Of a stretch of 40,273 nucleotides of DNA, positions 6,606 through 39,700 are shown piece after piece. Made by a program: the position numbers and the translations under genes. This DNA is from Macrostomum lignano (Eukaryota), in assembly GCA_002269645.1 (NCBI GenBank), contig NIVC01004626.1:1-40273 (forward strand), written 5' to 3'. Numbering within the stretch: the first letter of the stretch is position 1; each line of letters starts with the position of its first letter. The notes beneath the pieces are model-generated. The model was not told the DNA's origin. It worked only from the letters and a program-made list of their open reading frames with translations, and ran no database searches.

Positions 6606-6608
6606 GCA

Positions 6609-7708: not shown

Positions 7709-7859
7709 AGCATGAATAGTTGCACGTAATGTCGGCTGGGGAGTTGTCTACACAAAGCTTTGATGCGGCGGCTGCTGCGCCCATGACCGCCGGGCGCGGT
7801 TATGTATGGATTAGGGTTCTATTTATAAAGAGTATCGTATTTTCGGTTCCGGGGCGGTC

Positions 7860-8441: not shown

Positions 8442-8443
8442 TT

Positions 8444-8833: not shown

Positions 8834-8871
8834 ACATGTGCATATTTTGTTTATTTATAAGCAAAGCATAA

Positions 8872-9985: not shown

Positions 9986-10043
9986 ACCCTGAGCGCCTCC
10001 TTATATACCCTTGGGCGGAGGGTGGGGTGGCTGGGCGTTTTTG

Positions 10044-10933: not shown

Positions 10934-10943
10934 TTTTATTTAT

Positions 10944-11741: not shown

Positions 11742-11798
11742 TGCTTCTATTTATGGTTGCATTAACACGTTGCTCGCGGCCTGTCTGTCCCTCTGCAG

Positions 11799-12442: not shown

Positions 12443-12598
12443 TACGCACGATGTACTCAAATAATATATCTCCGCCAAACCCCCAAAATTTTCACCTCTG
12501 TTTAAGTTAGAAAATATAAAAGCTGAATTCTGGGCTGCGACCGCCCTAACTTCGTTTTCTTTATCGTCAGCCAAAATCAATTATTGGTTTATTCTTTA

Positions 12599-12611
12599 TG
12601 GCGCCCAAACA
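12599..12611 (+). other. BEL primer-binding site (tRNA-Lys-like TGGCGCCC)
   Basis: TGGCGCCCAAACA directly follows the 5' LTR end and resembles known tRNA-Lys PBS sequences. Confidence 0.7.
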
Positions 12612-13171
12612 AAAAGTACAACAAACAATTTAAAACTATTGCGGCCTACAGAAGCTCAAGCTAGTGCAACTGCACTGAATCTCTAGCGCAGCGATATTTC
12701 ACGTTCCGCACGGGGCTGCTATGTTGGCTATCGGCGAAGCGCAGTCATCGGAATAAGCAGCAGCTCGCGGCCTCCGGATCGCTGCAGCGGTGGTCCCGTC
12801 AACGGTATTCCGGTCCCTCGGGTTCCACGAGCAACCTTCAGCCAGGCCCTCTCTGATCGATGTCGAACAGTCCTTGCGTTGATGAGTATCGTAACTGTTT
12901 CTCCTTTTACATTACGTTTTTTGCGCATCTCGTTAACATTATTGACAGTTATACGTATAGTTAATAGCTGATCGTTAAATTTTTCAAACTCTTGAATTTT
13001 AGAGTTTCTCTTAACAAATTTACTCGTATTTTTTTGCTTTTTGCATTCGCTTGTCTTCGTGTTCACTCGTAGTGTTATCCTGCAGTCTGCTTCTTTTTTT
13101 GGGCTGTCCGTCTTCAAGTTCTCAGTGTCGGGAGTTCTTGGCTTTAGCAGCATCTCCCAATTCAAGTCGTC

Positions 13172-16305: not shown

Positions 16306-19300
16306 GTGCTCTGCGGACCATTGACGCTTAGTATCTCAAAGTGCGATTCGGAACGATCATCGGATTTACAAAGTGTCCAGGAGGTCAACTGCGCGAATAC
16401 AGCAGCAGTTTGCTGCTTTGTCAATGGCCAAATATCTGTCTCGAAGTCCTTAAATGACGATTTCACTTCTCTTTGGAGGTTGGACTCAATCGGGATTCTA
16501 GATGACCCACAACCTGTTTCGTCCGACGTCTTCCCTTGCAACCCGCAGCTGCATGAGGGACGATATTCTGTGCAGTTGCCTTGGCGTTTCTCCAAGGAGA
16601 CGATTAGCCTGCGTGACCATTTCAATGTAGCGACAACTCGGCTAAAGGCGAGCATTCGACATCTTCAGCGTAATCCAGCACAACTAGCGCAGTGTGATGC
16701 TATTCTTTCCGAACAAGAAGAGCTCGGCATCATCGAGAAAGTTCCAGTCGACGTCAACGACCAGTCGCCGAACATCATTCATTATCTACTACACAGCTGC
16801 GTCACGAAAAAGGATAGCGAACACACGAAGCTACGCATGCTTTTTGACGGATCAGCAAAGACGGACAGTACAGACTTCTCTATCAACGACTTTCTGCTGA
16901 CGGGGCCTACGTGTTTTCCACTGATTCCCCCGATTTTTCTTCGCTTTCGCCTCAAGTCGGTAGCTGTACTAGCAGACATTGAAAAAGCGTTCCTTCAAAT
17001 CGGTATTGACTCGCGTGATCGAGACGCTCTTCGGTTCTTGTGGACAGAGACGACGCCCGACGAGCCCTACAAAGTCATACATTATAGATTCTGTCGAGTA
17101 CCTTTTGGCCTAACTTGTTCACCGGCGATTCTACGAGCTACCATATTGCGACACCTTGAACTGCATCAAGACGATGCTCGGACAGTTGTAAACATCTTAA
17201 AGACTAGCCTGTACATGGACAATTTAGTCACTTGTTGCGATTCGGATGAAGAAGCCGGCGAGTTGTACGCTCAGACGAAGCGAATTTTTGCGGAAGCAGG
17301 CATGAACATGCGGCAGTGGCAGTCAAATTCCAAGGATTTCATGAAGTCGCTTCCTGTAGCGGATGTCGATAAAGCAAAGAAAGTTCTTGGCCTTGCTGGG
17401 GAACCGGATGAAGACATTTTTCGGCTTGAGTTCGCTGCAGTGCTTGACTCCGTCGCAGGTCAGCGGTACTCTAAGAGAATGATGCTTTCAATTTTTTCAA
17501 AGCTGTTTGACCCACTTGGGTTCCTAACACCGGCAGTGACGCTGGTCAAAGCCTGGTTTCAACAGCTTTGCAAGCAGAAAGTCCCGTGGGACGGTGATAT
17601 TCCGAGTGAGATGGCAGCAAAATGGACCCGCTGGTTGGATTCACTCAAGACGTTGAATCTGAAACTTCATCGTTGTGTCGTGCCTCAACAATGGCAGTCA
17701 TGTCGCATTGAAATGCAATTGCACGGTTTTTCTGACGCTAGTAAACGAGCATATACTGCTGTCGTGTACCTAAGGGTTATCGATCATGAGCGCCAGGATG
17801 TTTCTGCTCATCTTCTCATCGCTAAGGCTCGAGTGGCGCCTGTCGTGTCCATCAGCATTGCTCGATTGGAGTTGCTTGGAGCATTAATTCTAGCTCGTTT
17901 AATGGACTTCGTCTCAATCCAACTTCCGGGTCTTAAGCGTCAACTGTGGACAGACAGCATGACTACACTGCAGTGGATCACGTGTGAGTCCAAGCTACGC
18001 CAAGTCTTTGTGCAAAATCGGGTCAGTGAAATTCGACGGTTGACAGAGGCTCAGTAATGGCACCACGTGTCAGGGGAGACGAACCCGGCCGACCTGCCAT
18101 CGCGAGGATGCTTGCCAGAGCAATTGGTTTGTGACGCGACATGGTTATCGGTCCGGAATTTCTTCGAAGATATGACACGCGAGATGCAACCCCGGCGGCA
18201 GTCTACTGTGAACCTGAGCAAAACGAAACGACGACTGTGATGACCGTGGAGTGTACCGATTCTTCTTCACCTTCTCTGCTCAAAGCGATTCAGATTTCAA
18301 GATTTTCTTCGTGGACCAAGCTCACTCGAGTGGTTGGTTGGATCTTGCGATTTGTCAGCATCTTGCGCCATCGGATTGTTAAGCGACCATCCTTGTTAAC
18401 GGCTACGGAAGTATTACAGGCAGAACAGTCAGTGCTGCGAGCCGTACAGTGCGAATCATTGTCGAACGAAATTTCGTGCCTCAGCGGTTCTGGACCTCGT
18501 ATGCCGTTAGTGCGCGATCTCAAATTGTTCCTTGATCCTGCTGGATTAGTTCGGTCAGCGGGTCGTCTGCAGGGCGCTGTGCCCTTCGACACCAACAATC
18601 CAGTGCTGATTCCCTCGAAGCACCCGCTCGAAACCCTGCTTGTCCGTCATTGCCATGCGGCTGTGATGCATTCCGGGGTCGCGGCAACAATATGCAAGCT
18701 TCGTGAACGTTTTTGGATTTTAAAGGCGAGACAGCGCGTGAAGCAGTTACTGGGGGAGTGTGTTGTCTGCAAGAAGTTTCAAGGTCGACCGTTTTCCATG
18801 AGTGCGGTTCCGTAGCTTCCATCCTTCCGTTTGTCAACTGTTCGTGCTTTTCGTACCGTAGGACTGGATTATGCTGGTCCGATATTCTATCGGACGGGGG
18901 AGGGTGGTGAGAGCAAAAAGGCGTACATCCTGCTCTTCACTTGCTCAGCAACTCGAGCCGTTCACCTGGAAGTTGTTTCGAGTATGGACAGCGAACAGCT
19001 TCTGCATGCACTGCGTCGGTTCGTGGCTCGACGGGGCATTCCCTCCGTCGTCAGTGACAATGCGTGGACATTTCGATCAGGCGCCAAACTGATCGGCGCT
19101 AGTATCTCAGAAGAGCTGCAGTCGTTCTGTTCGTCAAAGAAGATTTTTTGGCATTTTGTGCCCGAGCGAGCCCCGTGGTGGGGAGGCTACTGGGAAAGGC
19201 TGATTGGCATCGTGAAGATGGCACTAAAAAAGGCTGCAGGTCGACAGCTGTTTACCTACGACCAATTGATCACTCTAACTGTGGAAGTCGAAGCTGTGGT

Positions 19301-19769
19301 TAACTGTCGGGCGCTGTTGTATGTACCTTCGGATTCAGGCGACGGTATGAAGTTCATCACACCGTCCCATTTCATGGCAGCTAGTCGTCTCAGCCAAGAA
19401 CCGGAAGATATCGACGGTGAGGCGGACTCCGTTCTACCGCTTCCGAAACGGCTTAGAATGCTTAGAGCAGCTTGGAACCAATTTTGGAACCAATGGAAGA
19501 CGTCCTACTTGGAGTCTCTGCGCGAGAAAGCCCTAAAGGATCAACCTAACCGCTGTCCACCAAATGTTGGTGAAGTAGTTCTTCTGGCAGGTGAAGCTCG
19601 ACAACCAAGACTCAAATGGAAATTGGGTATTGTCAAGGAAGTTCGTCCTGGCCGTGATGGTGCTATCCGTTCGGTTCTTCTTCGCGTTGCGGGTGCTGGG
19701 AGTTCCCGGCGCTGGGAACGGGTGAGACGGCCAGTCCAGTCGTTGATTCCTTTAGAGGTTCAATCCTAA
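16306..19769 (+). pseudogene. BEL pol (RT, RNase H, integrase) with two in-frame stops (18055-18057, 18813-18815)
   Basis: RT: ADIEKAFLQI, PFGLTCSP, LYMDN. RNase H: FSDAS. Read-through of the stops gives AQ*WHHVSGETNPADLPSRG and VP*LPSFR. Integrase HHCC plus DDE (GLDYAGP, SDNA, WERL). Confidence 0.9.
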
Positions 19770-20548: not shown

Positions 20549-20730
20549 AACAGAATTTCTGTGTGTTCACTGGCCTGACCAACAGAATCTCTGTGTGCTC
20601 ACTGGCCTTAGCCTGACCAACAGAATCTCTGTGTGCTCACTGGCCTTAGCCTGACCAACAGAATCTCTGTGTGCTCACTGGCCTTAGCCTGACCAACAGA
20701 ATCTCTGTGTGCTCACTGAACTGACCAACA
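20549..20730 (+). repeat. 38-bp tandem minisatellite (~4.5 copies, AACAGAATCTCTGTGTGCTCACTGGCCTTAGCCTGACC)
   Basis: Direct reading of head-to-tail units. Confidence 0.9.
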
Positions 20731-20790
20731 GTGAACTGACCATCAAATAATGAAATTTTTTCTGTTTTCTTACCTCTGCTCTTCTGTGAA

Positions 20791-21242
<452 letters not shown>

Positions 21243-21741
21243 AAAACAGATTCAGACTAGCTTTGGTAATAAAAGATGGATTTTTTCTACCTACCAGAAT
21301 AATCTTGCCTCGATAAGCTGAAGGCTTATAAATTTAGCTAATTGCTGTATTGAAAAGTGCCCAAGTTATGTTGTGTCTCAGATAGCTAGTTGGATTCAGG
21401 ATATGCGTGCGATACCTACTGCTTTCAGTAATATCTCACCCAGTGCAATTATCAGTTCTGTCATTGTCATTGAAACTACAGGATAAATAACTACAGCAAT
21501 GCCAACTCCAATGGCACAGTTCTATCTGTCTCGTGCATTATTAACTGCCATTGCGATAGAAACTTTGCTATCCAATCCAGTTGCACGCCCAGATTATTCC
21601 AGTTCATTTGAGCTCATTAAAATGCTGGATGCATTGGCGGCTTTTACTCCACGCCACACAAACTTCTATTAGCTAGTCACAGTTTAACTCTAATTAGAAA
21701 AAACTGTCTGCATCCTAGCTCAGCATTCTCGCTCCTAATTG

Positions 21742-24700
21742 ATGGCTTCTGAGCGACAGACCGAGGAAGGCCTTCAGGCTGATGAGAAGCAGCAAGACAA
21801 ACAACAAGAAAATTCACCGCCCCAGAAAGTCACTCAGTTCGTGTCCGACTTCTGCGGCTACACCTCCGCTCACGGACTCGGCCGGTTCTCTTCCCAGTCG
21901 GGCACCTTGGGTCGCGTCATCTGGCTTACCTTCCTGCTGGGCACCTACGGCGGCTTCACGTACCACCTGTACAGCCTGTTCGACCGGTTCATGGGCGCAC
22001 CGGTGCTCACGTCCATTGCGACCTCGCTTCCGTTCGAGTTTCCGGATGTGTACCTGTGCCCGCACAGAGCGATCACCATGAGCACCATGGTGGAGAGGAT
22101 CTCGCCTACGTATTTAACTAACTCCCAAGTTGACTGCTGCTGGTCGAACAGCTTCGCCTTTGACATGGAGAAAAAAGTAAGTGGCGCCCACCCGTCTGAG
22201 TTGCGACTTACTCCGGAGATTCTGGCACTGTTTCACGTGATTTCCTGGACGGAGCAATCGCTGATGAAAGAATACCGACAGGCTGTTAACCGTGAGCTCT
22301 GCGACTACTCAATGCTTTTTCTTCGAGAACCCTAGAACGCTCAGAACTCTGGTATAGCCTAGCTGTTCTTGTCAGAGCATCAAAGTTACTAAGACTTTTG
22401 TCAGGAGCTTAATTGTGACAATAAAAATTTCGCTAGCCTATTTAAAGGTTGCAGCTACAGTAAACATTTTCTGCATTAAACTTTCTCTGCACACGCCTAA
22501 CCTAAGCTGATTAGGCTTATCAACTCAGGAGTCGTGCCCAAACACCGTTGCAGACAGCAATTCCGAGTGTCGCATCACGCACGCTGGTGAGGAGTACAAT
22601 GGTAGCCTCTCAGTTGTGCCCATCTACCAACGTATTGGAGAAGAAAAATTCGTACCGAACGTCAGCTTCTCGGGCACCTTGCCGTACCTGGGCTACCAGA
22701 ATTGCACCGAGTGGAACCGAGCTGTCCCATCAAGCCGGCCTGATTCTGGCGTTGAACCTGTCAGAGAGTGACAACAAGTGCAGAGCTCCTCCGGGCGTCC
22801 CTCTGACTCAGTGGTGGAATGGGTCCTATCGTAAGTTAAACCGCAATTAAAACTTTACCGAGAATTCGGGATCAAGGACCACTAGAAGTTACCGTTGTAT
22901 CAGGACGCAACACTCGTAAATATTGCAAAGTTAATTGAAGGCCCGCTTGTTTACGTGTATTTAGCGATGCTTGCTTCAAAAAAGCATTCTAGTCGACTGT
23001 TTTAAAAAAGCTTGCACTAAATTTGAGCCTCAGGAGCTCCAGAATAGGTGTATTCATAATTTATTAGGGCTTTAACTTGTTAAATGCACATATATTTATA
23101 AAAGTACTTATGACATGTCATCATATGCAACCTTGCAACTCGTTTAAAACTTGCTATGCTTTATGCAGACATAGTGCTAGACATACAACGGTAACTTCTA
23201 GTGATCCTTGTTCGGGATACTCTTATATTTCCCTTCCTGAACAAGAGGTTGATCCTTAATTGACTGCACTTAAGAATTGTAAATGAAACTATCAGGTTTA
23301 GTAAATTTTTACTTGTGGAATTTAAATGGCTCATTAATGAAATAGTTTTTCGTCGCTTTTTGCAACACGAGTAGCGAGTCTGCTCAAATTATGTTCATAG
23401 AGCCAGTTTTATGTGCACGTGCCTCGCTAGTCACCTTGTGTGAGTGCTTTCATAAGAGTCGGTGGTGAGTCTGCAGCTAGTTCAATATGTTCCATTTTTA
23501 CGGAAATTCTTCCCTAGTACCCGGTATCTCACTAGTGCATTTTGGGTCGAAAACCGGCTCTAAATAGGGGTCGTTGCACCGATTCCAAAGACTCGACTTT
23601 AGAACCATGAGACGTATTCGGTCTGCCCCCATGAGGGCCGATCCAAAGACACAGAGTCTGAGCACTGAGCATTGAGAATGCACAGAAAGAGAAGGCACTA
23701 TTCCTCTGAAAAATGTATTGCCTGGGTGACTGAAATTAAAAATATGATCGGCATTTGTTCTCTAGGTCCGCTGCAAATCGAGCTTGGCTGCTATTTCAAA
23801 GCGGCAGCTTCGGCGCCCTATAAATGTGCCATAAATGACTTTGCTGGCATGACGAGCCAGATGTGCAGAGAATGCTGCTACGGAAAGGGTTATGTCTACA
23901 TGGGCCTGACCAGCCCAGACTGCTACTGCATCACAAAGAGCGACGGTGATAATATGAAGATGTTTGGCAGCGCCTCTAACTGTGACGCCACGTGCAACGG
24001 AGAAAAGCGAGTCTGCGGCAGCAACGATCTCCTGTCGCTGAGTCTCTTGCAGATCGATTTCGACGGTAGGTACCTTAAATATTTTTTTAATACACTATAA
24101 CAAGTTATCTAGTAAATAATAATAACTGCCAGAAACTTTTGCTTTCCATATTCTAATTCTCGGCTGCAATCAAATCCATCGAGTACGAGTGACCCTCAAT
24201 TTTCCACTCGGGGCTTTCAAGGATGGACACAGAGACTCTGTGGCTTCGCCTAGTCAAAGTAGTCTATGGCCCAAACCAAAGTGGCTAGAAGGCGCGATCA
24301 GTTTTCCAACTGAGGCAACAAATTTTCCACACCCTGTAAGCAGAGGACTCCGTGGAAAAGGCAGCGGAATTTTGTCTATGGCCAAGCTATACTGAGACCA
24401 TTCAGTGCCGAAGCTTTTCTGAGAGGCTTTGATCAGGTCTAAACTTAAGTGCGAGCTTGTGGTCTCGTAAGACCACAAACAGCCCTTTTCTTTTGACGAC
24501 TTGATTGACTGACGCGTTGTCTGCTCTCTGACGGCGGAGATTTAACCTCCACAAGGCCAAAATACTAAAATTAGCGATGAAACGCGGCAGCTCATCATTC
24601 ATTCTCACGAACGGGGAGACACAATACACTGTAGGTCTTGCCAAGATATCCTGGTTTAAATACGAGTGGAAAACTGATTGCGCCTTCTAGCCATTTTGGC

Positions 24701-25439
24701 TTGGGCCATAGACTACTTTGACTAGGCGAAGCCACAGAGTCTCTGTGTCCACTTTTGAAAGCCCAGAGTGGAAAATTGACTGCAAAAAGCGATACTTGTT
24801 TGCAGGCTTGGAATATCAGCTTCAAAAATCAAAGTTTGTCAACTCTCAGTCCCTCCAGCACCTTGCTAAACCCGACTGAGATCAGGCCCGGCAAGCAATT
24901 GATCATTAAGATAAAATCGCGCCTAATTAATCCACTTTTGATAATAGTAAGCACATAATTCCAGACTCGAGGCCGATGCGCATTCCGCTTGGCAACAGCC
25001 TCACGAATTCGATGCAGGGTCCTTACTGCTTCTACTTTGACAGCACCCAGCTCAGCGCCTACTACTGCGGCGTTCCGTTCTGTGGTAACGCAGTTTTATT
25101 TTTATCTACATGCATATTCGAGCTACATCTAGTATGGTCATTCAGGAAACTTGAAATGCAAGCTGGGAAGGTAATTAGTGTTGAAACAAACTGGCGATCC
25201 AATTCGATCAATAACTTGATTTCACGACAAAGCAAATTTAATTCACTGAAGTAAATTTACGCTGCCGTGAAGCACTGTTATGACGTGTGCCTGCAGATAC
25301 ACTGTAGTGTTTTAACAGCTCATAAATAACTCACTCACAAGTCGTAAGCCAAACTTTGAGCCAAGCCAAGCCAAGCCAAGCCAAGCCAAGCCAAGCCAAG
25401 CTGAGCCAACTAACTAACTAACTAAATAACTAACTAACG

Positions 25440-25478
<39 letters not shown>

Positions 25479-25495
25479 GAACTAACGAACTAACG

Positions 25496-25541
<46 letters not shown>

Positions 25542-25567
25542 ATTACTAACTAAATTACTAACTAACG

Positions 25568-25605
<38 letters not shown>

Positions 25606-25632
25606 ATAACTAACTAACTAACTAACTAAATT

Positions 25633-25689
<57 letters not shown>

Positions 25690-25690
25690 G

Positions 25691-25727
<37 letters not shown>

Positions 25728-25775
25728 GACTAACTAACTAACTAACTAACTAACTAACGAACTAACGAACTAACG

Positions 25776-25809
<34 letters not shown>

Positions 25810-25875
25810 ATTACTAACTAACTAACTAACTGACTAACTAACTAACGAACTAACTAACTAACGAACGAACGAACG

Positions 25876-25954
<79 letters not shown>

Positions 25955-28900
25955 GAACTAACGAACTAAATAACTAACTAACTAAATTACTAACTAACTA
26001 ACGCAGCATGTTAAGTTAAGATTGCCTTTATCATGTTTACTAGTTATTGTCGATAGAGTTATATTATACAATTTCGAATAAAAATTCATACAGGAGCCAA
26101 CGAGAACCACGACTGCGTCCCGAGCCAATCTGAAAAGGTGGCGCCAGACCAGACCGAGCTGGCGCACTACACCGGCTTCCGGAACGTCACAGTGACTGGG
26201 AAGCCTTGCGTGAACTGGAGAAACTTGCAAAATATTAGTCGAACGATCGAAGGTTATGGTAAGCAGCTTTCTCAAGAAATATGAGCAGTAAGCAGCAGAG
26301 TGATGAATGGCAATGAATTTTAGCGTTCCCTTTGTACTTTTATATTAGAGGCAGGGGCTGTGTGCACCCTGGCACACTTTAAGCGACATTGTGAAGAACT
26401 TTTATCCAAGACACAATGACAAGTCTAAACGGGCACTATTACACCATTCAGCGACTCCATCGGCAGATTTTTCCAATTGATAAGACTGATGATTTTACTA
26501 AACTAATTAAAAATTTCTTATTAGGTTATTGACTCGCTTATAATATTATCTGATTGTCAGTTCAACTTTCCCTCGCCACGCGTAATCAATGTACATCTTA
26601 CTCTCTGCCCAGGTGACCAATCAGTTCACCTACCCCATCTCTCCTTCAATTAAATCAAAATTAAAAGCATGAACTAATGGCTCAAGAGTACTCCTGTGAT
26701 CACACAGTTTGTACATCAAATTTGATTCCTTAGTGTGATTTGGTGGCCCATTCGTTGACAATGTGAATGAGCAGTTGGCGTTTCCTTTTTTAAAAGCAAG
26801 TTGGTAAGAGACTAGCAATAGCTTCGATTATTGGCCTGTGGGGTTGTTCGATTTTCGCTAACGAGAGACATCTTTTTAGGAGAATTTTAAGAGCATTGAT
26901 AATAACGATTATGAATAAGGCATGCTAGATGTACTCCTCTCTGTAAGTGTCGGTGAGCAGAGTAAACATAGTCGTACTTACCTGCCTGCCTTGTAGACTG
27001 TGACCAGAAGTCTCAAGCTCACTCCGTCGGTACATGTACTTCTATTGGCTGAATCAAATCTCAGTGCGGCATTCTGATGTGCTTATCATAAATCGAAACC
27101 TTGAATAAACTTTTAGTTTGGAACGCATCCAGGACTTTTCTGCAAATGCCGGATTCTGTCGGATTCAGCGATCACAATTACTGCCGGTCGGTCAGCCACG
27201 TCCAAGAGAACATCATCCATATCTACGGCAGTCTAAAGTACGCTATTCATCTCTTCTAAGGGTGTCTCATAATAACTGTTTATCTCGTTATGTAATGTGA
27301 AAAAATTCAGTACATTTTTGCATTTCTATGTACTCGTATCAGGAAAATTCGATGGACTCTGGAGTCGAGCCTGACTCCCGGGTGCTATGTCTATACACCG
27401 GATGAAGAAAACATTTACACGTTCAGAACCTGTAGCATTCCGATGTGCTGTGAGTTTGTTTTTTTAAATTCATAGCTAAATTCGAAACAAAATATATTCT
27501 ATTCTCAGGAGACTTAGAAGAAAAGTTTGGGCTTTGCTAAGAAAGGGCACGCGAACTTAGCCCGAAAATGGACGCAAAGTATCGGTGTCACTGTCAGATC
27601 CCGCTATGAATGCAGAATCATCGAAAATCCCATAATGATGAATTTCTATTTGTTGGTTAAAGACACCGAGAGCCCGAGCATCACAGGCGCGATCCGGCAT
27701 TCCATTGGCACCGACCTACTGGAACGCCAGTTCGGCAGCAATCTGGACGTGAGCCTGACGGACTGCAGTTTTGGCGGGCAGAAGTGCACACAAGATGACT
27801 TCTTGAATATGCTGCATCCTCAGTTGGGTCTGTGTCACCGCTTCAAAGCCGATCGGTTCGTGGCTGGCATAAACAATGTCCAGCTGGCCAACTCGGAGCT
27901 GTCAATCACATTCTTCACTGACGCCACCGACTCATTTGGACGAGCATTCAACAACATAAGCAAACTGGAGGCCGGAGTCCGGCCCAATGAGATGCTGGCG
28001 GATGAAACCAACAATGCGCTCAAGGTGAATTTAAAAAGACTGGAAAAATAATTCACTGTTAGGGTGTTTGTGCTGAGTAGGGTGCTTGACTGCAAGTTTT
28101 CCGCCTCAAAACTAATGCGACATTCTTAGCTTTTAGGATTAGTTAGTTGGAATAATTGAAAACGATCCAGACTCTTCAAGCCTTTTCAAACTTTAAAACC
28201 ATAAAAGTGATCATTGGCTGAGCAAGGCAGCGAGCAATGGTGCAGCGCCTCGAACACCGGAGCTCTATGATCATAAGAGCTCAACAATTCTTACACTCGG
28301 CCTTGCAAACTGAGTAAAAAGATCTCTAGAAGGATAGAGTGGAAAAAGAAAAGAAAAAGTCACTTCCCAATAAAATCGATAAAATCGAAGGAGATTAGAA
28401 AAATTGACCAATTTCTTAAACCTGAGACAATATTTTCGTGTCCTTACTGCATAACTCAATCCGTCTGTATGAGATGCAAGTACTGGTAGATAATTAACGC
28501 CTAAAACACATAAATTACAATCGCCTCATGAGGCAAATGAGGAAGGTAACAAACCAAAATTACAGCCGAAGTAAACTGAGATCCGTTTCCTTTTGGGTGG
28601 GAAGTCAGTTTTATGCTGCTTTAAGCACCTTCTTTCATCCGCGAATTGCTTCAGGTGATTATCCTGCCGCAAGGCGAGTTCCCCGACTCCTCGTACGCTT
28701 TTGAAGTAGATCCAGCGCAGCTCGTGGTGATCCGACTGCGTTATGACCGCGTGACCAAAATTTCGCGCTCGGAGCTGCCCTGCAAGAAGTTAGAGGCTCC
28801 AGTCACTTACCGGATGTCTAGCTGGGCCAGCGCTCGTGATAAAAATTTAACAAAGTATGCCGGTTAGACCTTCATAATACTCAATATTATAATTTACATT

Positions 28901-30211
28901 ATATAGTATTCCAGCCCGTCAATATTTTCACAGGCTGAAAATCGACGCCAGAAATCTTGTTCAATCTTCGGCCAATTGGAGTCAAAAAATTGCTATGCTC
29001 AAAGCAGCCCTCCTGGAAAACAACCAGGATGAGTAAGAGATGCATTCTTAACAAGCGCAAATCTTTAATTCTGCACTTAATTGTAAAATCTGATACAATA
29101 ATTTCAGTGGAGGATTTCAGCAAAAAATGGAGTTCAAAGTTTCCGGCTTCCAGGACTGCATCTACGCCTACCAGGTGCAGAAGTTCGTTGATGCCTGCAA
29201 CTGCCTACCGGAGTCGTTGCCGATCCCTGAGGCCTATTTCGATCGCTACTCGTACTGCTTCAACAGCAGCAATGTCGCGTACCTGGATGCGACAGAACAA
29301 TGCTATGTCCGACAAATGGCCCGTTTGTTTCTTTACCAAAAGGAGACCTTCAGCGTTTGCGAGTCTCAGTGCCGAATTCGAAAATATGTGTTGCGCCAGG
29401 CTACGCGCACCTGGCCCGTCATCAGTCGGGTGAATGCAGTGAAGTTCCTTGCCAACCTGGCCTCCCTGACCGGTTACCGCTTCAATTTGAGCAACTCTCG
29501 AGGCATAGCCAGCATCTACCACACCTACCTCTCGGCGAAGAGCGTCGAGAATGTACCCCGCGACAACATGAGCTCGTCGGAGTTGCTGAAGTTTGACTAT
29601 CAGCTCCAGGCCATAAAGAACCGACTGGCCAAGCTGACTGTAAAGGCATCGTCTGCCTTTGGCGAGGACATTACCGAGGAAGAAGCTTATCCTGCTAAGA
29701 ATCTCGTTGCTGACATTGGTGGTGAGTTCGTTGTTGGGTGCATTATTTGCTAAATGTAAATATAAGTTACATCTAGAGTGAGTCTTCAAGAGCCAAAAAG
29801 TCATTAAAAGAACTGGTCTGAGATATTTGTTCTGTTGATATCCACATCAGTATAATAATTGTCAATGGACTGAATGGGCTGCGTTAAGTAAAGTTAAAAC
29901 ATGAACTTGCTACTTGTCATTCCAAACGTTGCTCCAAATTTGTGTCAGGTGCCCTCGGCCTCTGGAGCGGCGTCTCAGTTCTGACCGTCTGCGAGCTGGT
30001 CGAACTCCTCATCTACATCGGCATGGTCGTTGGGCAGCGGATGCGCAAGCAAGACGTTGAACCCGAGACTGGCAAAATCAATGACAACGGCACCCAGGAA
30101 GCTCAGAATGAGATCGAAACAGTCGATACAGGGGAATCTGAGCAAGTCGGCAACGGTGAAACACAGCATGTAGTCACGAGTTCCAAAGACTCTGCTGAGA
30201 CGTGCCTATGA
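21742..30211 (+). CDS. DEG/ENaC (ASIC-like) channel subunit with kringle(WSC)-kringle insert, ~1025 aa; exons 21742-22291, 22554-22830, 23766-24065, 24965-25084, 26094-26258, 27117-27237, 27343-27449, 27663-28024, 28655-28854, 29108-29721, 29949-30211
   Basis: Pre-TM1 TSAHGLGR, TM1, FPDVYLCP, DCSFGGQKC...GLCHRF, CNCLP, LVADIGGALGLWSGVSVLTVCE (GxS filter). All ten introns are GT-AG with compatible phases. One frameshift is needed in exon 2 (~22720-22770). Confidence 0.85.
24197..24778. mobile_element. Foldback/MITE-like element with ~110-bp inverted arms (24197-24307, 24667-24778) in an ENaC intron
   Basis: The arms are near-perfect reverse complements (CAATTTTCCACTC...CAGTTTTCCA). No clear TSD. 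Confidence 0.7.
25361..26003 (+). repeat. (CCAAG)n followed by ~600-bp (TAAC)n microsatellite
   Basis: Direct reading; intronic. Confidence 0.97.
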
Positions 30212-30270: not shown

Positions 30271-30979
30271 CGTGGCGCATAAGTAATTGAACAACTAAAC
30301 TTAAATAACTAACTCATACATGAGGAACGTTGACGAAACTTAACAGCCCTAAAGATCATATAATGTTGCGCCGGTTTTAGCTGACCGGGGCCTGTTACCT
30401 CTGCCCGCTGGGTGGGTGGGGTTGCGATGTACGTGTGTGTGGTATGAGGTGGTGGGTTGGGTCGCGCTGGCCCTTTTATTCGCGTGTTCTGCCTTGGCGT
30501 GCTTGGCTGAAATTTTTTTTTGTTTTCTTGTGTGCTTGCTTTTGCCCCTCTGCTTTTACCCCTCTGCTTTTACCCCTCTGCCTTTACCCCTCTGCCTTTA
30601 CCCCTCTGCCTTTACCCCTCTGCTTTTACCCCTCTGCTTTTACCCCTCTGCCTTTACTCCTCTGCCTTTACCCCTCTGCTTTTACCCCTTTGCTTTTACC
30701 CCTTTGCTTTTACCCCTCTGCTTTTACCCCTCTGCTTTTACCCCTTTGCTTTTACCCCTCTGTTTTTACCCGTTTGATTTCGCATAAAATACGCTGGCTC
30801 TCGCTGGGCTCGTTTCGCCCGCTTTTTCGCCGCCACCCCTGCGTCCTCTCTTTGCTCCTTTTGGCCCATTCAAATTCTTACTATGTTTTCTTTAAGGCTG
30901 TTGAGATTCGTTAACGTTCCTCATGTATGCGATAGTTATTTAAGTTGAAAGTTGTTTCCGTTACTTACACGCCACCCTG
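30271..30979. mobile_element. Tc1/mariner-like MITE with ~65-bp imperfect TIRs enclosing a 14-bp minisatellite (CCCCTCTGCTTTTA)n at ~30545-30772
   Basis: 30271-30337 is an imperfect reverse complement of 30907-30976. The right end reads CACCCTG|TA (mariner-type terminus); the left end is degenerate. Confidence 0.6.
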
Positions 30980-33900: not shown

Positions 33901-34494
33901 AGCATGACCCCCTTTGACCATATAAGTCAGAACTGAATTCAGTCACGTGATACAACGATCGAAAGAGAGTTGCAAGCAGTTCTTTTAAAAGAACTTTTTA
34001 CGGTGTAAACCCTTTACTTCAGTTGTCTGTGATGATATTTTCTTCAAACAAATTAGTCCTAAAAAGAGCACCTAAGCTACTAAAAGTACCAATTAGAGAT
34101 CGATTTATACGAGTACTTTGCTAAGGTGGTCGATCATGAGACGGCAGGAATGGTGGCTCCAGGCCGCTAGAGAGGCCCAGTTAAACGCTTCAGGTTAAAC
34201 GCTTAAAAGGTTCAGGCAGAAATTTATCTAGCAAATGGCCCGGATAACTATAGAAGCAAACAAATTTTCAGTTCAACCCGCTCTGAGAGCAACACCGTAG
34301 CCTAGAATACTCAAAACCTCACTCTATTAGCAGTTTTGTCTGTCGTTTCTTAAGAATTAAAAACTGCGCATTCTGAAGAAAAATAACAAATAAATGACGC
34401 CCAGGCATACTTCTATCTGCATTATAAATTCCAAGCCAAATAAATTCCAATAAATACCTTCTTTCCATTTAACTATAACTCTTATAAATTCTGA

Positions 34495-34862
34495 ACGCAT
34501 TGGCGGCCTTTACTCAACGCCATACATTTTAAGTTACGCTATTTCTAATTCTAATTAGAAAAAACTGTCTGCATCCTAGCTCAGTCTCGCTCCTAACTGA
34601 TGGACTCCGAGCGACAGACCGAGGAAGGCCTTCAGGCTGATGAGAAGCAACAAGGCGAACAACAAGAAAAGTTCACCGCCCCAGAAGGTAACCAAGTGTG
34701 TGTCCGATTTCTGCGGCTACACCTCCGCTCACGGACTCGACCGGTTCTCTTCCCAGTCCGGCACCTTGGGTCGCGTCATCTGGCTCACCTTCCTGCTGGG
34801 CACCTACAGCCTGTTCGACCGGTTCATAAGCGCATTGGTGCTCACGTCCATTGCGACCTCGC
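34495..34862 (+). pseudogene. Truncated duplicate of the upstream region and exon 1 of the ENaC gene
   Basis: Near-identical to ~21627-22030 (SERQTEEGLQADEKQQ...FCGYTSAHGL). Has a +1 frameshift, a 24-nt deletion in TM1 and an abrupt end after GCGACCTCGCT. Confidence 0.85.
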
Positions 34863-37775
34863 TGGGAGGCAGCTGGGAGGCAGAAAAATGTATCCTACTA
34901 ATTGGATAACTTCTGTGCGGACAAAAGAACTGGGTATAAAAATTGAAACGAAAAATTGCTTTAATTAATCATTGGAAGACATTCAAACCCGTCAAGCCCG
35001 TGCAGCTAAAGGCACATGGATTATGAGCCATTGTGACAGTTTTATGGGTCCGGAGGGAGGGTGGTGGTGAACTGCAACTGTTGGATGAGGCTTGGAAGCT
35101 GCCCTCCTCATCTCCGTCTAGTCAGACTGCCACAGCCGGCGACGCTATTTGAAGCATCGTAGGGAGCCCCACAAAGCATTGTTTTAACAGGCAGCAATTG
35201 CTCAATTATTAGAACTGTGGTGGCCCAGCGCAGACAGCGGAGACAGGCGCCACATGTGTAACTATAATTAGTGGGATTAAAAGCCATAAAGGACTATAGC
35301 TTTAATAATAAAAACTTGGACCACTCGCTGCCTTTGGGTTAAAGTTTGGGACTTCAACGATAAAGTTTGTATTGAAAATTGACGCGCATCATCCCTTTCG
35401 TGGATATTTGCGCTTCACACTACTGACTGATTCAAGTAGTCTGCAGTTTATTTAAGCATAATAGAATTGTGGTGAGGGCGCACTTTTTTTCAAATCTCAC
35501 ACTCGCACATGGATTCCAAACTTGTTAGCCTACTAACAGCAGGCTACGGGCATTTTTCTTCTTTTTATGTAATTTCCTAGAATTCATACTAGTAGAATTT
35601 TTGTAGCTATATGGTTTTGGCCTACTTAATTGTAGTCATTATAACATAGGCGCGGTTTTCGCTACTTTTGGGGTCATAAATCATTGCTTGTGAGCTGGTC
35701 TGACAGCCACCTGCGCCTTACTCAGTGTTAGGGCTCGCGCCAGATGGTCTGAGTGGATGCGGGCGGTAGCTTTTTTCTCATCATTTTTGACAGGCCATCA
35801 GATTTGTGAGATTTATGTAGCGTTCTTACTTGCTATTCTTTTATCTTCTATTAAAGACAGGGGCTGCGTTCACTCTGGCGCACTTTAAGCGACGTTGTCT
35901 TACAACCGGCGAGGGGCATTACTGCCCATTCCGCCGACTCCCCTGAGCAGGCATACAAGCGCGCAGATGCGTACGCAGCCGTATGCACAGTCACACACAG
36001 GAGTGTGCAGCGGCCCTGACTGCATGTACACTGCACTGTGCATTGGGGGGGGGGGGTTGGCCCTCAAGGGCATTAATTTCACAGCCCCAAATTAATTTGA
36101 ATGCACTTCGAATCGAGCCTGGGCTGCTGGCACATCAGAGCGCCGCGCTAGACTACTGGGCTACGGTCCTTTTGCAGCACCGTCGATATACATGTACTTT
36201 CGTATCTTGAGTACATAGGATTTTTACCAACATTATCTAGAAACGTCTTCCTGCTGAAATAACAGCTTGGCAGTAACCTGAGAGTGAGCCTCACGAACTG
36301 CAGCCTTGGTAGACAAAATGGTGCAATGAGCAGTGCATTCCGAGTGTGCTGCATCCCCAGTTACGAGTAGTTAGTGCCACCGTTTTCGTGACAAATATGA
36401 GTACAATGCAGCTGAATTTGAGCTGCATTCTGAGTCGTGTTACCATTCTAAACTAAGAGCGTTCTCCTGACCAAGACCTTTTTTGGTCAGTCGATTTCGG
36501 ATTTCATGGTAAAATATAATTCAACCAAAAAAGTGGCACACTTTGCTGAGGTAAGCCAGGGCAGATGGTGTTTCTATTATATTTTCTTCTAATGATTGTT
36601 TTATTAACAGTAGATTGCCTTAAACTACTAAGAACACAAACATAAAAAGATGGCAACTTCGAGAGGACAAACAAAATAACAACATGGCATGGCAAATGAG
36701 CTGCTTTACCATTAGCGAACCTGATCGATTCGAGAGATTTCAGCGTGAAGCAGACTCTCAGCTTTTTGCTCAGTCAGCGTTTTGTGACTACTGCAACCGT
36801 GAGCAGTGGATTTGCCTGATAATTTTGGGATTTGCCTTTGTTCCGGTCCTTTCGGTTCTGGGGGATGGTCTCAATTGATACTATTATAATTTTGTTGCAG
36901 GGTCAATTGGGTTTAGGGAATAAATATTGCTCGGGACTTGGGAGTTTCTTAGAACAGGGGAGTTACTCCGGGTAGTGTCCGAGTGTAAGTGTCCGAGCGG
37001 CAAGACACTGTCTAAATTTATGCAGCTAACTTCAGTCCGGGGGAAGGAGGAAGAAGGGCTACACGGTGGATCAAAGTTGCCTGGGAAACGGTGGCGCACT
37101 AATGGGGAATTCTAATAGCTAATAGGGAATGCTACGAGTAGCATAGAGGGTAGGACGTCTAATAGGGAATTGGGTAAAGAGGCAGGGCGCTTAATAACAA
37201 AAAAGGGGGGTTCAGGGATAGGCAAAGCTTGATAAGCCAGTGTGCATCTGGAGAAAGGGGCTGGCAGGAAGTCTCAAGGTTGGGCTGTACGTCCTGGGAA
37301 ATGAAGGAAGCGCGTTTCTAACGAATGGAATGTTCGCGGGAAATAGGCGCCTTATTGAACAACGTGTTCTTGGGATAGAAAAGGAAGACCGAACACTGAC
37401 TCAAGTCTATTTTTAGAACAAAACGTTCATCAAGGCCTCAATGCTGCAGGCACCAGTCAGCAAGGCTGAATAAGCGGGCGAAGAAGTTCGAGAGCGAGTT
37501 GTCTCTTCAAGGTATATTTTCGATGGCGGACGATTTTCAGCAAAACTTTTAAGTAAGATTTTATTAGAAAAAGAGTAATCTAAGTTTTTTATGAGTAATC
37601 TATGCGGTTTTTATTTGACATTATTTAATAAGCGTCTATTACTAAAAAGGAAGGCAAAAGTATAGATTGGCAATAATGAGCACTACTAAAAATAGCTATA
37701 ACACCTTCAACATGCACGTTTGATTATCAATAGAAGGCAACGAATATGGCGAATATGGCGATATGAGCTGCTTAT

Positions 37776-39700
37776 TGTAGTGAGTAGTGTAGTGAGTTGC
37801 AAGTGTACTTGTATGCCCTAGTCGCTAGAGCGGGGTTTGGGGGCTGCTATTGTACAGCATGTACGTGCTTTCCACTCACCCTCTGTCTCTATCTTTTATA
37901 CCCAGTTATGTAACAATCGTTGTATCGTATTTAACCTGCGTATCGATCTGATAAATGCCAAAGGCTTCGTCAACTCTCAGTCGCATCTCTCTGCCTTAGT
38001 CTACAACTGGTAGCAGAGCGTTATTCTAGAATGGCTGAGAAAGGTTTGACCGACAGTGCAGCGCTGCCCAGAGTTTCAGTACCGGCAACTTTAAGAAATG
38101 GCTGCGCGTTTCAATGTGTGCGCAAAAGTCAACAAGTGGGACACATGCAAAGCGGAGCGACTGGCCACATTTCTGGACGGCGAGGCTCTCGTCGTATATT
38201 TGGAGCTGTCGGCAGGAGATCAGGCAGACTACCACAAAGTAGTCCAGGCATTGGATAATGCATTCCATCCGAACCGCGAGCACTTCGCCGTCAAGGAGGC
38301 GTTCAAAGCAAGGAAAATTTTGTCGACTGACACTCCACGCATGTATCCATACGAGTTAAAGAAGATGCTCAAAAGCTCTCCGTGGACAACAAAGATGCTC
38401 AAGAGGCTCTGCTGTTTCATCAAAGTTTTAAACGGCTGCGATTCACGTTCTCGATGACAGCCTGTGCTTCTCAAAGACCAAGTCGGATCATCTCCGGCAA
38501 CATCTCCGGCCTTAGGCTCCAAGTGCAAGATCGCGGTACCCGAAGTGACCTTTCTCGGCACACGATATACAAAGGATGGTGCCCAGCCCAGCCAAGAGAA
38601 GCTGGAGGCAATTCAGCAGTGGAAAGAGCTGAGGTCAGCCAAGGAGGTGCGTCAGTTCATCGGCCTGTGTAACCAATATCCAACTATCCAACGTAGCCAA
38701 CTTTGCTGCCATCGCCGCACGCTGCAGCCTTCGACAAGCTCAAAAGGTGCCTAATTAGTCCTCCGATAAGTCCTTCTAAGGAAATCTGCATTTGGACACG
38801 GCGGGATCCCTGATGTCGCACGTCGTTCGCTTCTGCCTTACTGGTTCTGGAGGACCTGGCCACCTGACGCATGTTTTTGCCACCTTCTCGGCAAGCACTT
38901 CATGTGCACATGGATCATCCCGCTCACCTTCGATTCACAGAGAGTCAGCTACGGCAGGCTAGGACGATGGCGTCTGCTGCTCAAGAGTTCGATAACGTCA
39001 AGTACCGAAGAGGCGTTAAGAATCAGATGCTGATTCCAGGCTGCACGCTTAGGTCGCAGCTACGCAAATCACTCCGGAAATCGACACAGTGTTCACAGCG
39101 GCAGGAGAGCTCAGCCAGGTGTTCAGGCGATGGACAAGGACGCAGAATTGCACCCAGATGGCGAGCAGGACCACTGCAGCAACTAGGTAGAATCTGCAAG
39201 AAGCTGAAGCTAGATTATGACGGGTTCTACTGTGCAAGTTCAATGAGCCGGACGGCCTGCGGAGGTTCCAGTGGTGCCAGCAAGACTTCGCGAACAGTTT
39301 TTGACCAACGCTCACGAAGGTAGGAGGTCATTTCGGAGCCGAAAAATGCTACCGCACACTGAAACTGACTGCCTACTGGCCCGGCATGGCTGAAGACATT
39401 GTGCAGCACTGCCAGAGTTGTTCTGTCTGTCAGGAGAAGAAAGCGGGCTCGTGACCAGCGCGCCGCTCGGAGACCCCCCCCCAATCGGCTCGCCGTGGGA
39501 TTCTGTGGCTATCGACATCGTCAAGGTGGCGCCATCATGGCGCGGCAACAAGTACCTGCTGGTGGCCCAGGATCAGTTTCCAAGTACCTGACGGCCGTGG
39601 CGATTCCTGACCAGACTGCTGAGACTACTGCTCGCGCCTTTCTCTCCATCTGTTCCCAGGCTGGACTTCCCCGAGTCATTGCTGTGGCTATAAGCCAAGC
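37776..39700 (+). mobile_element. Degenerate, internally deleted Ty3/Gypsy LTR retrotransposon (5' LTR ~37776-38005, PBS 38008-38018)
   Basis: LTR TGTAG...CTACA, iMet-type PBS TGGTAGCAGAG. Fragments: gag LATFLDGEALVVYLEL; RT thumb VTFLG...EKLEAIQQW...EVRQFIGLCNQY; integrase YWPGMAEDIVQHCQSCSVCQ, PWDSVAIDIV, KYLTAVAIPDQTAETTARAF. No 3' LTR recognised. Confidence 0.8.

What the first reader, a model, noticed from the sequence alone, without database searches (positions are those of the whole stretch)
22554..27449. DEG/ENaC channel with two kringle domains and a WSC domain in its extracellular loop
Six phase-compatible exons between TM1/FPDVYLCP and the resumed ENaC core encode kringle 1 (ECRITHAGEEYNGSLS, NCTEWN, NKCRAP, GPYCFY, YYCGVPFC), a WSC domain (LGCYF...MTSQMCRECC..KGYVYMGL...DCYC...C...C...CG) and kringle 2 (DC...YTGFRNVTVTGKPCVNW, HNYCRS, PGCYVY, TCSIPMC). 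Each kringle has all six Cys. Kringle plus WSC is known from Kremen-type receptors; I do not know of it inside an ENaC finger region. Inference: a ligand-, glycan- or matrix-sensing channel.
Basis: partly seen in the sequence, partly recalled or inferred. Interest (0 to 1): 0.8.

Follow-up and report, generated by a model that had tools for sequence, protein, structure and literature searches.

The report
ENaC channel with kringle/WSC finger insert
This flatworm-type sodium-channel gene really does carry two kringle-derived modules and a WSC domain inside its extracellular finger, an architecture shared only with undescribed Macrostomum lignano genes, but this copy has a frameshift in one kringle exon.

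Summary
The window holds a 12-exon DEG/ENaC gene on the + strand (ATG 21742, stop 30211).

They encode kringle-1 N-half, then WSC, then kringle-1 C-half, then kringle 2. The WSC domain is therefore nested inside kringle 1, between Cys3 and Cys4.

- WSC is solid: it passes Pfam's threshold and matches yeast Wsc1 and Kremen1 at about 1e-10.
- The kringles fail Pfam's threshold. Profile-profile comparison with bona fide kringles gives 98% and 97.7% probability with all six Cys aligned. Structure prediction did not confirm the fold.
- At least seven Macrostomum lignano paralog groups share the architecture and intron positions. One is a complete model from an RNA-seq-based annotation. No other organism in the top 150 hits of a 1.8-billion-representative search has it, and I found no paper describing it.

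One correction: exon 2 is not phase-clean. NCTEWN and NKCRAP are in different frames, with a +1 shift within 22718-22733. As assembled, this copy is either a recent pseudogene or carries an assembly indel.

Function is inferred only: a binding "crown" on the gating finger.

The parts
21742..22291 (+). Exon 1: N-terminus, HG motif (aa 44-45), TM1, FPDVYLCP (beta1), start of finger. Ends in phase 1 at donor C|GTGAGC.
   Evidence: The ORF and donor are read directly. M. lignano homologs align through 22176 as far as ...EQSLMKEYRQAVN, which rules out the earlier GTAAGT donor. The intron sits at the same position and phase in P0011.
22554..22830 (+). Exon 2: kringle-1 N-terminal part (Cys1-Cys3: ECRITHAGEEYNGS ... 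NCTEWN ... NKCRAPPGVPL). It is 277 nt and internally frame-shifted.
   Evidence: The M. lignano K1a profile matches positions 3-59 in one frame (36 bits) and about 60-98 in the +1 frame (34 bits). The homologous M. lignano exon is 303 nt and in frame.
22718..22733 (+). Interval that must contain the +1 frame disruption (CGAGCTGTCCCATCAA). It coincides with a gap of about 12-16 residues against all M. lignano paralogs. The conserved motif W-[NS]-x-A-A-[RQ]-x-L is only partly present (WNRAV).
23766..24065 (+). Exon 3: complete WSC domain on one 300-nt phase 1-1 exon, nested in kringle 1.
   Evidence: Pfam WSC scores 28.5-28.6 bits against a cutoff of 27.8. The family profile matches Wsc1 7pz2 at E 4e-10 and Kremen1 at E 6.5e-10. 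In M. lignano it is also a 300-nt 1-1 exon at the same place.
24965..25084 (+). Exon 4: kringle-1 C-terminal part (Cys4-Cys6: GPYCFY...YYCGVPFC), 120 nt, phase 1-1.
   Evidence: hhalign aligns it to PWCF...WEYCDIPFC of canonical kringles. Its PDB profile hits are all kringle C-termini.
26094..26258 (+). Exon 5: kringle-2 part a (Cys1-Cys2: DC...YTGFRNVTVTGKPCVNW), phase 1-1.
   Evidence: It shares the near-identical motif AVYTGLRNVTVTGKPCLRW with a Trichuris kringle protein.
27117..27237 (+). Exon 6: kringle-2 part b (Cys3: HNYCRS), phase 1-2.
27343..27449 (+). Exon 7: kringle-2 part c (Cys4-Cys6: PGCYVY...TCSIPMC), phase 2-1.
27663..30211 (+). Exons 8-12 (27663-28024, 28655-28854, 28934-29032, 29108-29721, 29949-30211): the rest of the DEG/ENaC extracellular core, TM2 with GVS (G-x-S) at aa 979-981, C-terminus and stop codon.
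   Evidence: Pfam ASC covers aa 536-961. PDB matches are FaNaC, ASIC5, ENaC-gamma and ASIC1.
34463..36414 (+). Decayed partial duplicate of the same gene: exon-1-like and exon-8-like remnants only, with frameshifts, an 8-aa deletion and a stop codon. No kringle or WSC remnants.

Best explanation
What the locus is. It is a member of a lineage-restricted DEG/ENaC subfamily, so far seen only in the flatworm Macrostomum lignano. In this subfamily the finger domain has been enlarged by about 360 residues of disulfide-rich modules:
- an expanded kringle (K1);
- a WSC domain inserted into K1's Cys3-Cys4 loop;
- a second expanded kringle (K2).

How it was built (inferred). The modules sit on discrete exons whose outer boundaries are all phase 1. 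The WSC is one symmetric 300-nt 1-1 exon. The architecture therefore looks like module insertion into introns (exon shuffling).

How it most likely works (inferred). The subunit assembles into the usual trimeric cation channel, because the HG motif, two TM segments and G-x-S filter are all present. The kringle-WSC-kringle block would form a glycosylated 'crown' on top of the finger, the domain that receives ligand, protease and mechanical inputs in other family members. I propose that the crown binds an extracellular partner, either a glycan/matrix component or a protein ligand. Binding or tension on it would then bias gating.

Status of this copy. A +1 frameshift in the K1 N-terminal exon means the assembled sequence cannot encode the full protein. 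This is either a very recent pseudogene or allele, or an assembly indel.

What is shown and what is inferred:
- Shown: gene structure, domain homologies, conservation of the architecture and intron positions, and the frameshift.
- Inferred: trimeric channel function, the crown's binding role, and its coupling to gating.
For: Gene model:
- With one nucleotide removed, the 12 exons give an open 1058-aa ORF with all splice sites GT-AG.
- Pfam ASC scores 142 bits. HG, FPDVYLCP and GVS are present.

WSC:
- Pfam passes its cutoff, and 7 of 8 family members match.
- The family profile matches solved Wsc1 at E 4.3e-10 and Kremen1 at E 6.5e-10.
- An AF2 model of the P0011 insert (pLDDT 72.7, pTM 0.73) hits Wsc1 7pz2 (E 6e-4, TMt 0.66) and then Kremen.

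Kringles:
- The insert profile finds Darwinula multi-kringle proteins at E 2.9e-24 and 1.8e-15, and a Trichuris kringle protein at 4e-5, in a database of 5.8e9 sequences. Pfam confirms these as kringle proteins (2e-73, 2.7e-88, 3.6e-23).
- hhalign gives K2 98.2% (E 3.5e-14) and K1-minus-WSC 97.7% (E 2.3e-12), over the full kringle with all six Cys aligned.
- Every PDB profile hit is a kringle.

Conservation:
- At least 7 M. lignano paralog clusters have the same order and the same Cys positions.
- In the P0011 locus the exons are K1a 303 nt, WSC 300 nt, K1b 123 nt and K2a 195 nt, all phase 1-1, matching the window.
- That annotation is RNA-seq based.

Position: the insert lies in the finger.

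Extracellular character: 22 Cys and 8 sequons.
Against: - The exon-2 frameshift means this copy may be dead. A decayed duplicate lies 4 kb downstream.
- The kringles fail Pfam's own threshold.
- AF2 of K2 alone was low confidence (pLDDT 64) and gave no kringle fold match. Retention of the kringle fold is therefore unproven. Three of the five Cys spacings are far outside the canonical range.
- There is no expression, localisation or electrophysiology evidence for any family member.
- All homologs come from a single species with a redundant, recently duplicated genome.
- The source organism of the window is unknown.
Confidence: 0.72

Rival explanations
1. This copy is a recent pseudogene. A small net deletion of 3n+2 nt in the kringle-1 exon destroyed the frame, so the locus no longer makes a channel.
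For: - The frameshift lies within 22718-22733.
- E2 is 277 nt against 303 nt in M. lignano P0011, a 26-nt (3n+2) difference.
- The lesion coincides with a gap and with partial loss of the AA[RQ]xL motif conserved in all paralogs.
- The neighbourhood is rich in transposons and holds a decayed duplicate of the same gene.
Against: - The other 11 exons are intact: about 3.2 kb of ORF, all GT-AG sites, and all 22 insert Cys conserved. A long-dead copy would show more lesions, as the downstream fragment does.
- Linker length at this spot varies among paralogs.
Confidence: 0.45
2. The frameshift is an assembly or consensus indel, or a heterozygous variant, and the gene is intact and functional in the animal.
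For: - It is the only disruption in an otherwise perfect 12-exon gene.
- The shift interval contains short homopolymers (CCC, then AA/CC/GG/CC).
- Removing one C restores a full 1058-aa ORF.
Against: - This cannot be tested without reads.
- The exon is 26 nt shorter than the P0011 exon, not just 1 nt off, and a conserved motif is incomplete.
Confidence: 0.45
3. The kringle and WSC exons belong to a separate gene nested in a large ENaC intron, or the M. lignano models are artefactual fusions of neighbouring genes.
For: - The window itself has no transcript evidence.
- About 7% of M. lignano assembled transcripts are multi-gene precursors (PMC5730564).
Against: - The insert is in frame on both sides. 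It is flanked by the two halves of one ASC domain, with matching phase-1 junctions, in the window and in at least 7 independent M. lignano loci.
- A polycistronic precursor would place whole ORFs in series, not one inside another.
- No start or stop codon or signal peptide bounds the insert.
Confidence: 0.03
4. The two 'kringles' are not kringle homologs but unrelated cysteine-rich repeats that mimic a few motifs.
For: - Pfam Kringle is below threshold.
- Foldseek on the K2 model finds no kringle.
- The Cys spacings are expanded: 45/25/138/13/5 and 31/39/32/16/5, against canonical 22/24-51/11-17/10-19/4-5.
Against: - hhalign gives 98.2% and 97.7% over the full domain with all six Cys in register.
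- The database profile search hits bona fide kringle proteins at E 1e-24 to 4e-5.
- All 48 and all 13 PDB hits are kringles, in the correct sub-regions.
- One M. lignano fragment of the family (P0164) is auto-named 'Kringle domain-containing protein'.
Confidence: 0.05

Closest known systems
Macrostomum lignano predicted proteins, e.g. PAA82974.1 / A0A267GC91 (P0011, 1052 aa), PAA86857.1, PAA47210.1, A0A1I8IV52
   Same: Same order (TM1, K1a, WSC, K1b, K2, ASC core, TM2), same conserved Cys, and same intron positions and phases. They are 34-37% identical to the window protein.
   Different: They are different genes, and probably from a different species. They are intact in the K1a exon. They are only automatically annotated ('WSC domain-containing protein' or 'hypothetical protein'). 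I found no paper describing them.
Kremen1/2 ectodomain (kringle-WSC-CUB; PDB 5fws, 5fww)
   Same: It combines kringle and WSC modules in one extracellular unit. The WSC here matches the Kremen1 WSC at E 6.5e-10, and the model's fold search returns Kremen.
   Different: Kremen is a single-pass receptor with tandem KR, WSC and CUB domains. Here there is no CUB and there are two kringles. The WSC is nested inside a kringle loop, and the whole block is grafted into an ion-channel finger.
Yeast Wsc1 cell-wall mechanosensor WSC domain (PDB 7pz2)
   Same: It is the best sequence match (E 4.3e-10) and the best fold match (E 6e-4, TMt 0.66) for the WSC exon family.
   Different: It is a fungal single-pass sensor, not a channel. 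The resemblance is a functional analogy (a carbohydrate-anchored force sensor) and is a lead only.
[quoted passage not shown]
   Same: They are a precedent for DEG/ENaC subunits that have accreted extra extracellular modules (PMC10424705).
   Different: The added modules are EGF, not kringle or WSC, and no EGF is detected here. EGAS channels gave no currents in oocytes in that study, so their function is also unknown.
FaNaC / ASIC5 (BASIC) / ENaC / ASIC cores
   Same: The core is homologous: FaNaC 7yvb at E 1e-13 and ASIC5 at E 2e-12. HG and G-x-S are present. In these channels the finger is a site of ligand and protease input (established knowledge of the family).
   Different: Their fingers are about 40-100 residues of helices. 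Here the finger carries about 360 extra residues of disulfide-rich modules.

Membership tests
DEG/ENaC (Pfam ASC, PF00858) | Significant match to the ASC profile spanning both ends of the protein | tested here: met
   142.3 bits, E 3.1e-41, against a cutoff of 23.6, in 2 stretches. PDB matches are FaNaC, ASIC5, ENaC-gamma, PPK26 and ASIC1.
DEG/ENaC (Pfam ASC, PF00858) | Pre-TM1 HG motif, post-TM1 FPxV(T/Y)xC strand, and G-x-S filter in TM2 | tested here: met
   AHG at aa 43-45, FPDVYLCP at aa 100, and GALGLWSGVSVLT with GVS at aa 979.
DEG/ENaC (Pfam ASC, PF00858) | Forms a trimeric amiloride-sensitive cation channel | not testable with these tools
   This needs heterologous expression.
DEG/ENaC (Pfam ASC, PF00858) | Uninterrupted reading frame | tested here: not met
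   A +1 shift inside exon 2 (22718-22733) makes straight splicing run into stop codons.
Kringle (PF00051) | Reaches Pfam's gathering score | tested here: not met
   K2 scores 18.0 bits (E 0.0037) against 34.3, and K1 gets no hit. M. lignano homologs score 14.7-15.6 bits.
Kringle (PF00051) | Homology to bona fide kringles by profile methods, full length, with six Cys in register | tested here: met
   hhalign gives 98.2% (E 3.5e-14) for K2 and 97.7% (E 2.3e-12) for K1-minus-WSC. The profile search hits Pfam-confirmed kringle proteins at E 2.9e-24, 1.8e-15 and 4e-5.
Kringle (PF00051) | Compact triple-loop fold of about 80 aa with 1-6, 2-4, 3-5 disulfides | tested here: inconclusive
   The modules are 131 aa and about 130 aa (plus the WSC), with expanded loops. 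The AF2 K2 model has pLDDT 64 and no kringle fold hit.
WSC (PF01822) | Reaches Pfam's gathering score | tested here: met
   The exon alone scores 28.5-28.6 bits against 27.8. It scores 21.9 bits in the context of the whole protein. 7 of 8 family members match, with best E 2.5e-12.
WSC (PF01822) | Sequence and fold similarity to solved WSC domains | tested here: met
   The profile matches 7pz2 at E 4.3e-10 and Kremen1 at E 6.5e-10. Foldseek on the M. lignano homolog model gives 7pz2 at E 6e-4 with TMt 0.66.
Kremen-type receptor | Tandem KR-WSC-CUB ectodomain on a single-pass receptor | tested here: not met
   No CUB hit. The WSC is nested within K1, and the host protein is a two-TM channel.
EGAS-type DEG/ENaC (EGF + ASC) | EGF domain(s) joined to ASC | tested here: not met
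   No EGF family hit at E <= 1.

The most novel reading that the evidence does not exclude
The kringle-WSC-kringle crown may be a built-in, Kremen-like receptor ectodomain fused to an ion channel. Binding of a specific extracellular protein or glycan, or tension through a matrix tether, would directly gate a DEG/ENaC pore. That would be a natural 'ionotropic matrix/ligand receptor', built by exon shuffling, with a domain (WSC) nested inside another domain (kringle).
Probability: 0.2. Interest if true: 0.8.

Novelty: new variant of a known kind. Interest (0 to 1): 0.55.

Why it matters
How DEG/ENaC channels are coupled to extracellular cues (tethers, matrix, ligands) is a long-standing question. 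The finger is the family's most variable input domain.

This family has grafted recognisable binding modules into the finger: a WSC domain, which in yeast Wsc1 belongs to a mechanosensor, and kringles, which are protein- and lysine-binding modules. That offers a natural experiment. Delete or swap the crown and ask what gates the channel.

The locus is also a clean example of module accretion through phase-1 exons, including a domain nested within a domain.

M. lignano is transgenic-tractable (PMC5730564), so the family can be tested even if this particular copy is dead.

Tried and rejected
- Earlier exon-1 donors (22110 GTATTT, 22177 GTAAGT) and an alternative acceptor at 22529. These were rejected because M. 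lignano homologs align through 22291 and share the phase-1 intron there.
- A mini-intron to repair E2. I enumerated all GT-AG pairs. None keeps both conserved halves with credible sites.
- A word-index search with the insert alone found nothing. The whole protein and the alignment profile succeeded.
- P0001 is not on record for locus retrieval. P0011 worked.
- AF2 and Foldseek of K2 alone were uninformative.
- Identifying the source organism. There is no shared repeat DNA with the M. lignano locus. Ten exact ORF look-ups were absent from the collection. The organism remains unknown; a macrostomid flatworm is a guess from homology only.
- I looked for kringle or WSC remnants in the downstream duplicate and found none.
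- Literature: no paper joins ENaC with 'WSC domain', and the only ENaC + kringle + degenerin paper is a protease review. The three M. lignano DEG/ENaCs tested by Dandamudi et al. carry different gene IDs, and kringle and WSC are not mentioned.

Full report
**What is in the sequence**

The window is intron-rich eukaryotic DNA of about 45% GC. A DEG/ENaC gene lies on the + strand, from ATG 21742 to the stop codon at 30209-30211.

I reconstructed 12 exons, all with AG/GT boundaries:

| Exon | Coordinates | Content |
|---|---|---|
| E1 | 21742-22291 | N-terminus, HG motif, TM1, FPDVYLCP |
| E2 | 22554-22830 | Kringle 1, N-terminal part |
| E3 | 23766-24065 | WSC |
| E4 | 24965-25084 | Kringle 1, C-terminal part |
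| E5 | 26094-26258 | Kringle 2, part a |
| E6 | 27117-27237 | Kringle 2, part b |
| E7 | 27343-27449 | Kringle 2, part c |
| E8 | 27663-28024 | ENaC core resumes |
| E9 | 28655-28854 | ENaC core |
| E10 | 28934-29032 | ENaC core |
| E11 | 29108-29721 | ENaC core |
| E12 | 29949-30211 | TM2, C-terminus, stop |

Every quoted motif is there.

E1 carries the HG motif, TM1 and FPDVYLCP. E8-E12 carry the rest of the ASC domain and TM2 with a G-x-S (GVS) filter. Pfam ASC scores 142 bits (E 3e-41). The nearest solved relatives are FaNaC, ASIC5, ENaC-gamma, PPK26 and ASIC1.

Against FaNaC 7yvb, residues 151-191 correspond to aa 115-560 here.

**The correction: exon 2 is frame-shifted**

Straight concatenation of the exons runs into stop codons. 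E2 is 277 nt, whereas an exon flanked by two phase-1 introns must be a multiple of 3.

A K1a profile built only from M. lignano sequences matches E2 in two frames:
- positions 3-59, through ...NCTEWNRAV, in one frame (36 bits, E 1e-12);
- positions about 60-98, ...ELSHQAGLILALNLSESDNKCRAPPGVPLTQWW, in the +1 frame (34 bits, E 7e-12).

The shift must lie within 22718-22733. No GT-AG mini-intron repairs it credibly.

The site coincides with a gap of 12-16 residues relative to every M. lignano paralog. It also coincides with partial loss of their conserved W-[NS]-x-A-A-[RQ]-x-L motif. The homologous M. lignano exon is 303 nt, 26 nt (3n+2) longer.

Removing one C of the CCC at 22726-22728 gives an open 1058-aa protein. 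Nothing else in the gene is broken.

I cannot tell a recent pseudogene or allele from an assembly indel, and I rate the two about equally. A clearly decayed partial duplicate lies at 34463-36414. It holds exon-1 and exon-8 relics with frameshifts, a deletion and a stop codon, and no kringle or WSC remnants.

**Domain identities: WSC**

WSC is solid:
- The E3 product alone passes Pfam's gathering score (28.5-28.6 bits against 27.8), and 7 of 8 family members match.
- A family profile hits the solved yeast Wsc1 sensor domain (7pz2, E 4.3e-10) and Kremen1 (E 6.5e-10 to 1.2e-9).
- An AlphaFold2 model of the M. lignano P0011 insert (pLDDT 72.7, pTM 0.73) finds Wsc1 first (E 6e-4, TMt 0.66) and Kremen next.

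**Domain identities: kringles**

The kringles are divergent. Pfam gives only 18 bits for K2 (cutoff 34.3) and nothing for K1. Homology is nevertheless well supported:
- The insert profile retrieves Pfam-confirmed multi-kringle proteins of Darwinula (E 2.9e-24 and 1.8e-15) and a Trichuris kringle protein (E 4e-5) from 5.8e9 sequences.
- Profile-profile comparison with 12 canonical kringles gives 98.2% (E 3.5e-14) for K2 and 97.7% (E 2.3e-12) for K1 with the WSC removed. Both alignments cover the full domain with all six Cys in register.
- All 48 and all 13 PDB profile hits are kringles, aligned at the appropriate sub-regions.

Cys-to-Cys spacings show how far the loops have expanded:

| Module | Spacings |
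|---|---|
| K1 | 45 / 25 / 138 (38 without WSC) / 13 / 5 |
| K2 | 31 / 39 / 32 / 16 / 5 |
| Canonical kringles | 22 / 24-51 / 11-17 / 10-19 / 4-5 |

AlphaFold of K2 alone was low confidence (pLDDT 64) and gave no kringle fold hit. These are therefore kringle-derived modules whose fold retention is unproven.

**Topology**

The exon and residue order is K1 (Cys1-3), then WSC, then K1 (Cys4-6), then K2. The WSC is nested in the Cys3-Cys4 loop of kringle 1, not placed between two kringles.

E2-E5 are all phase 1-1 exons. The WSC is one symmetric 300-nt exon, so its skipping would keep the frame.

**Relatives**

Searches of about 5.8e9 clusters and 1.84e9 representatives found the full architecture only in Macrostomum lignano. 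It occurs there in at least seven paralog clusters, 34-37% identical to the window protein. All insert Cys are conserved in the members that span the whole insert.

Among the 150 best of the 225 hits, only M. lignano proteins carry an ENaC core. The rest are multi-WSC proteins (oyster, rotifer, Diplonema) or multi-kringle proteins (Darwinula).

P0011 (PAA82974.1, 1052 aa) is complete from TM1 to TM2. Mapping it onto its locus shows four phase 1-1 exons, with introns at the same positions as in the window:

| Module | M. lignano P0011 exon (nt) | Window exon (nt) |
|---|---|---|
| K1a | 303 | 277 (frame-shifted) |
| WSC | 300 | 300 |
| K1b | 123 | 120 |
| K2a | 195 | 165 |

GenBank's annotation of that assembly derives from a genome-guided RNA-seq transcriptome (PMC5730564). 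For the family, then, the insert exons are spliced into the channel mRNA.

A nested-gene or fusion artefact is very unlikely, because the insert is in frame inside one ASC domain at many independent loci.

**Mechanism**

What is shown: a DEG/ENaC subunit with an HG motif, two TM segments and a G-x-S filter. Its finger carries about 360 extra residues with 22 Cys and 8 N-glycosylation sequons.

What I infer: the subunit forms a trimeric cation channel topped by a glycosylated kringle-WSC-kringle crown. The finger is where ligands, proteases and mechanical inputs act in other family members (established knowledge of ASIC, ENaC and FaNaC). WSC and kringle are binding modules, as in the Wsc1 mechanosensor and in Kremen's KR-WSC surface. 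The most likely role of the crown is therefore to bind a matrix or glycan component, or a protein ligand, and to bias gating.

I put about 0.85 on the architecture and family assignment, and about 0.3-0.35 on this functional reading.

**Comparison and novelty**

It works like a DEG/ENaC and passes that family's sequence tests, except for the broken frame. It is not a Kremen: there is no CUB, the WSC is nested, and the host is a channel.

The M. lignano homologs sit in UniProt and GenBank with automatic names only. I found no paper linking ENaC with WSC or with an intrinsic kringle. The M. lignano DEG/ENaCs tested by Dandamudi et al. have other gene IDs.

Hence my rating: a new variant of a known kind, moderately interesting. 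The rating is tempered by the frameshift in this copy and by the architecture already being present, though undescribed, in databases.

Noticed in passing
window 1905-12455: A block of intronless ORFs on the minus strand is bounded by inverted repeats of about 690 bp (1905-2591 against 12455-11790, 92.7% identical). Pfam confirms an rve integrase (7082-7708) and a Fic/DOC-domain protein (10944-11741, HPFSDGNGRTARLL). Other ORFs look by eye like a packaging ATPase (2672-3325, GVNQSGKTT) and a cysteine protease (3336-3773), but they have no Pfam hit. It is possibly a Maverick/Polinton-like or other large TIR element that carries a Fic gene.
   Followed up: partly
window 16306-19769 (+): A BEL/Pao-type LTR retrotransposon pol, with Peptidase_A17 (E 4e-42), RVT_1, rve and DUF5641 hits.
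   Followed up: partly
window 34463-36414 (+): A decayed partial duplicate of the channel gene. It is 82% nt-identical to 21597-22028, with frameshifts, loss of GGFTYHLY, and an exon-8 relic containing a stop codon. It has no kringle or WSC exons.
   Followed up: yes
window 24196-24308 and 24667-24779: A 113-bp inverted repeat (94% identical) in the intron between the WSC exon and the K1b exon, resembling a MITE or hairpin-type insertion.
   Followed up: no
window ~25340-26000: A long (CTAA)n/(CGAA)n microsatellite, preceded by (GCCAA)n, fills much of the intron between K1b and K2a and drops GC to 34%.
   Followed up: no
window 20650-21240 and 30400-30900: Tandem repeats give long spurious ORFs (SGVWCLV... 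and PLCFYPSAFTPL... repeats) immediately upstream and downstream of the gene.
   Followed up: no
window 38000-40273: Another retroelement-like region, with gag/pol-like ORFs and an integrase zinc-finger-like HCQSCSVCQ motif. It is interrupted by frameshifts.
   Followed up: no
L001 (M. lignano NIVC01000440.1) 6064-12787: The P0011 gene has an intron of about 6.7 kb splitting the exon that corresponds to window E6. My splice-site reconstruction found no canonical GT/GC-AG solution at that junction. This may be a non-canonical site or an annotation quirk.
   Followed up: no
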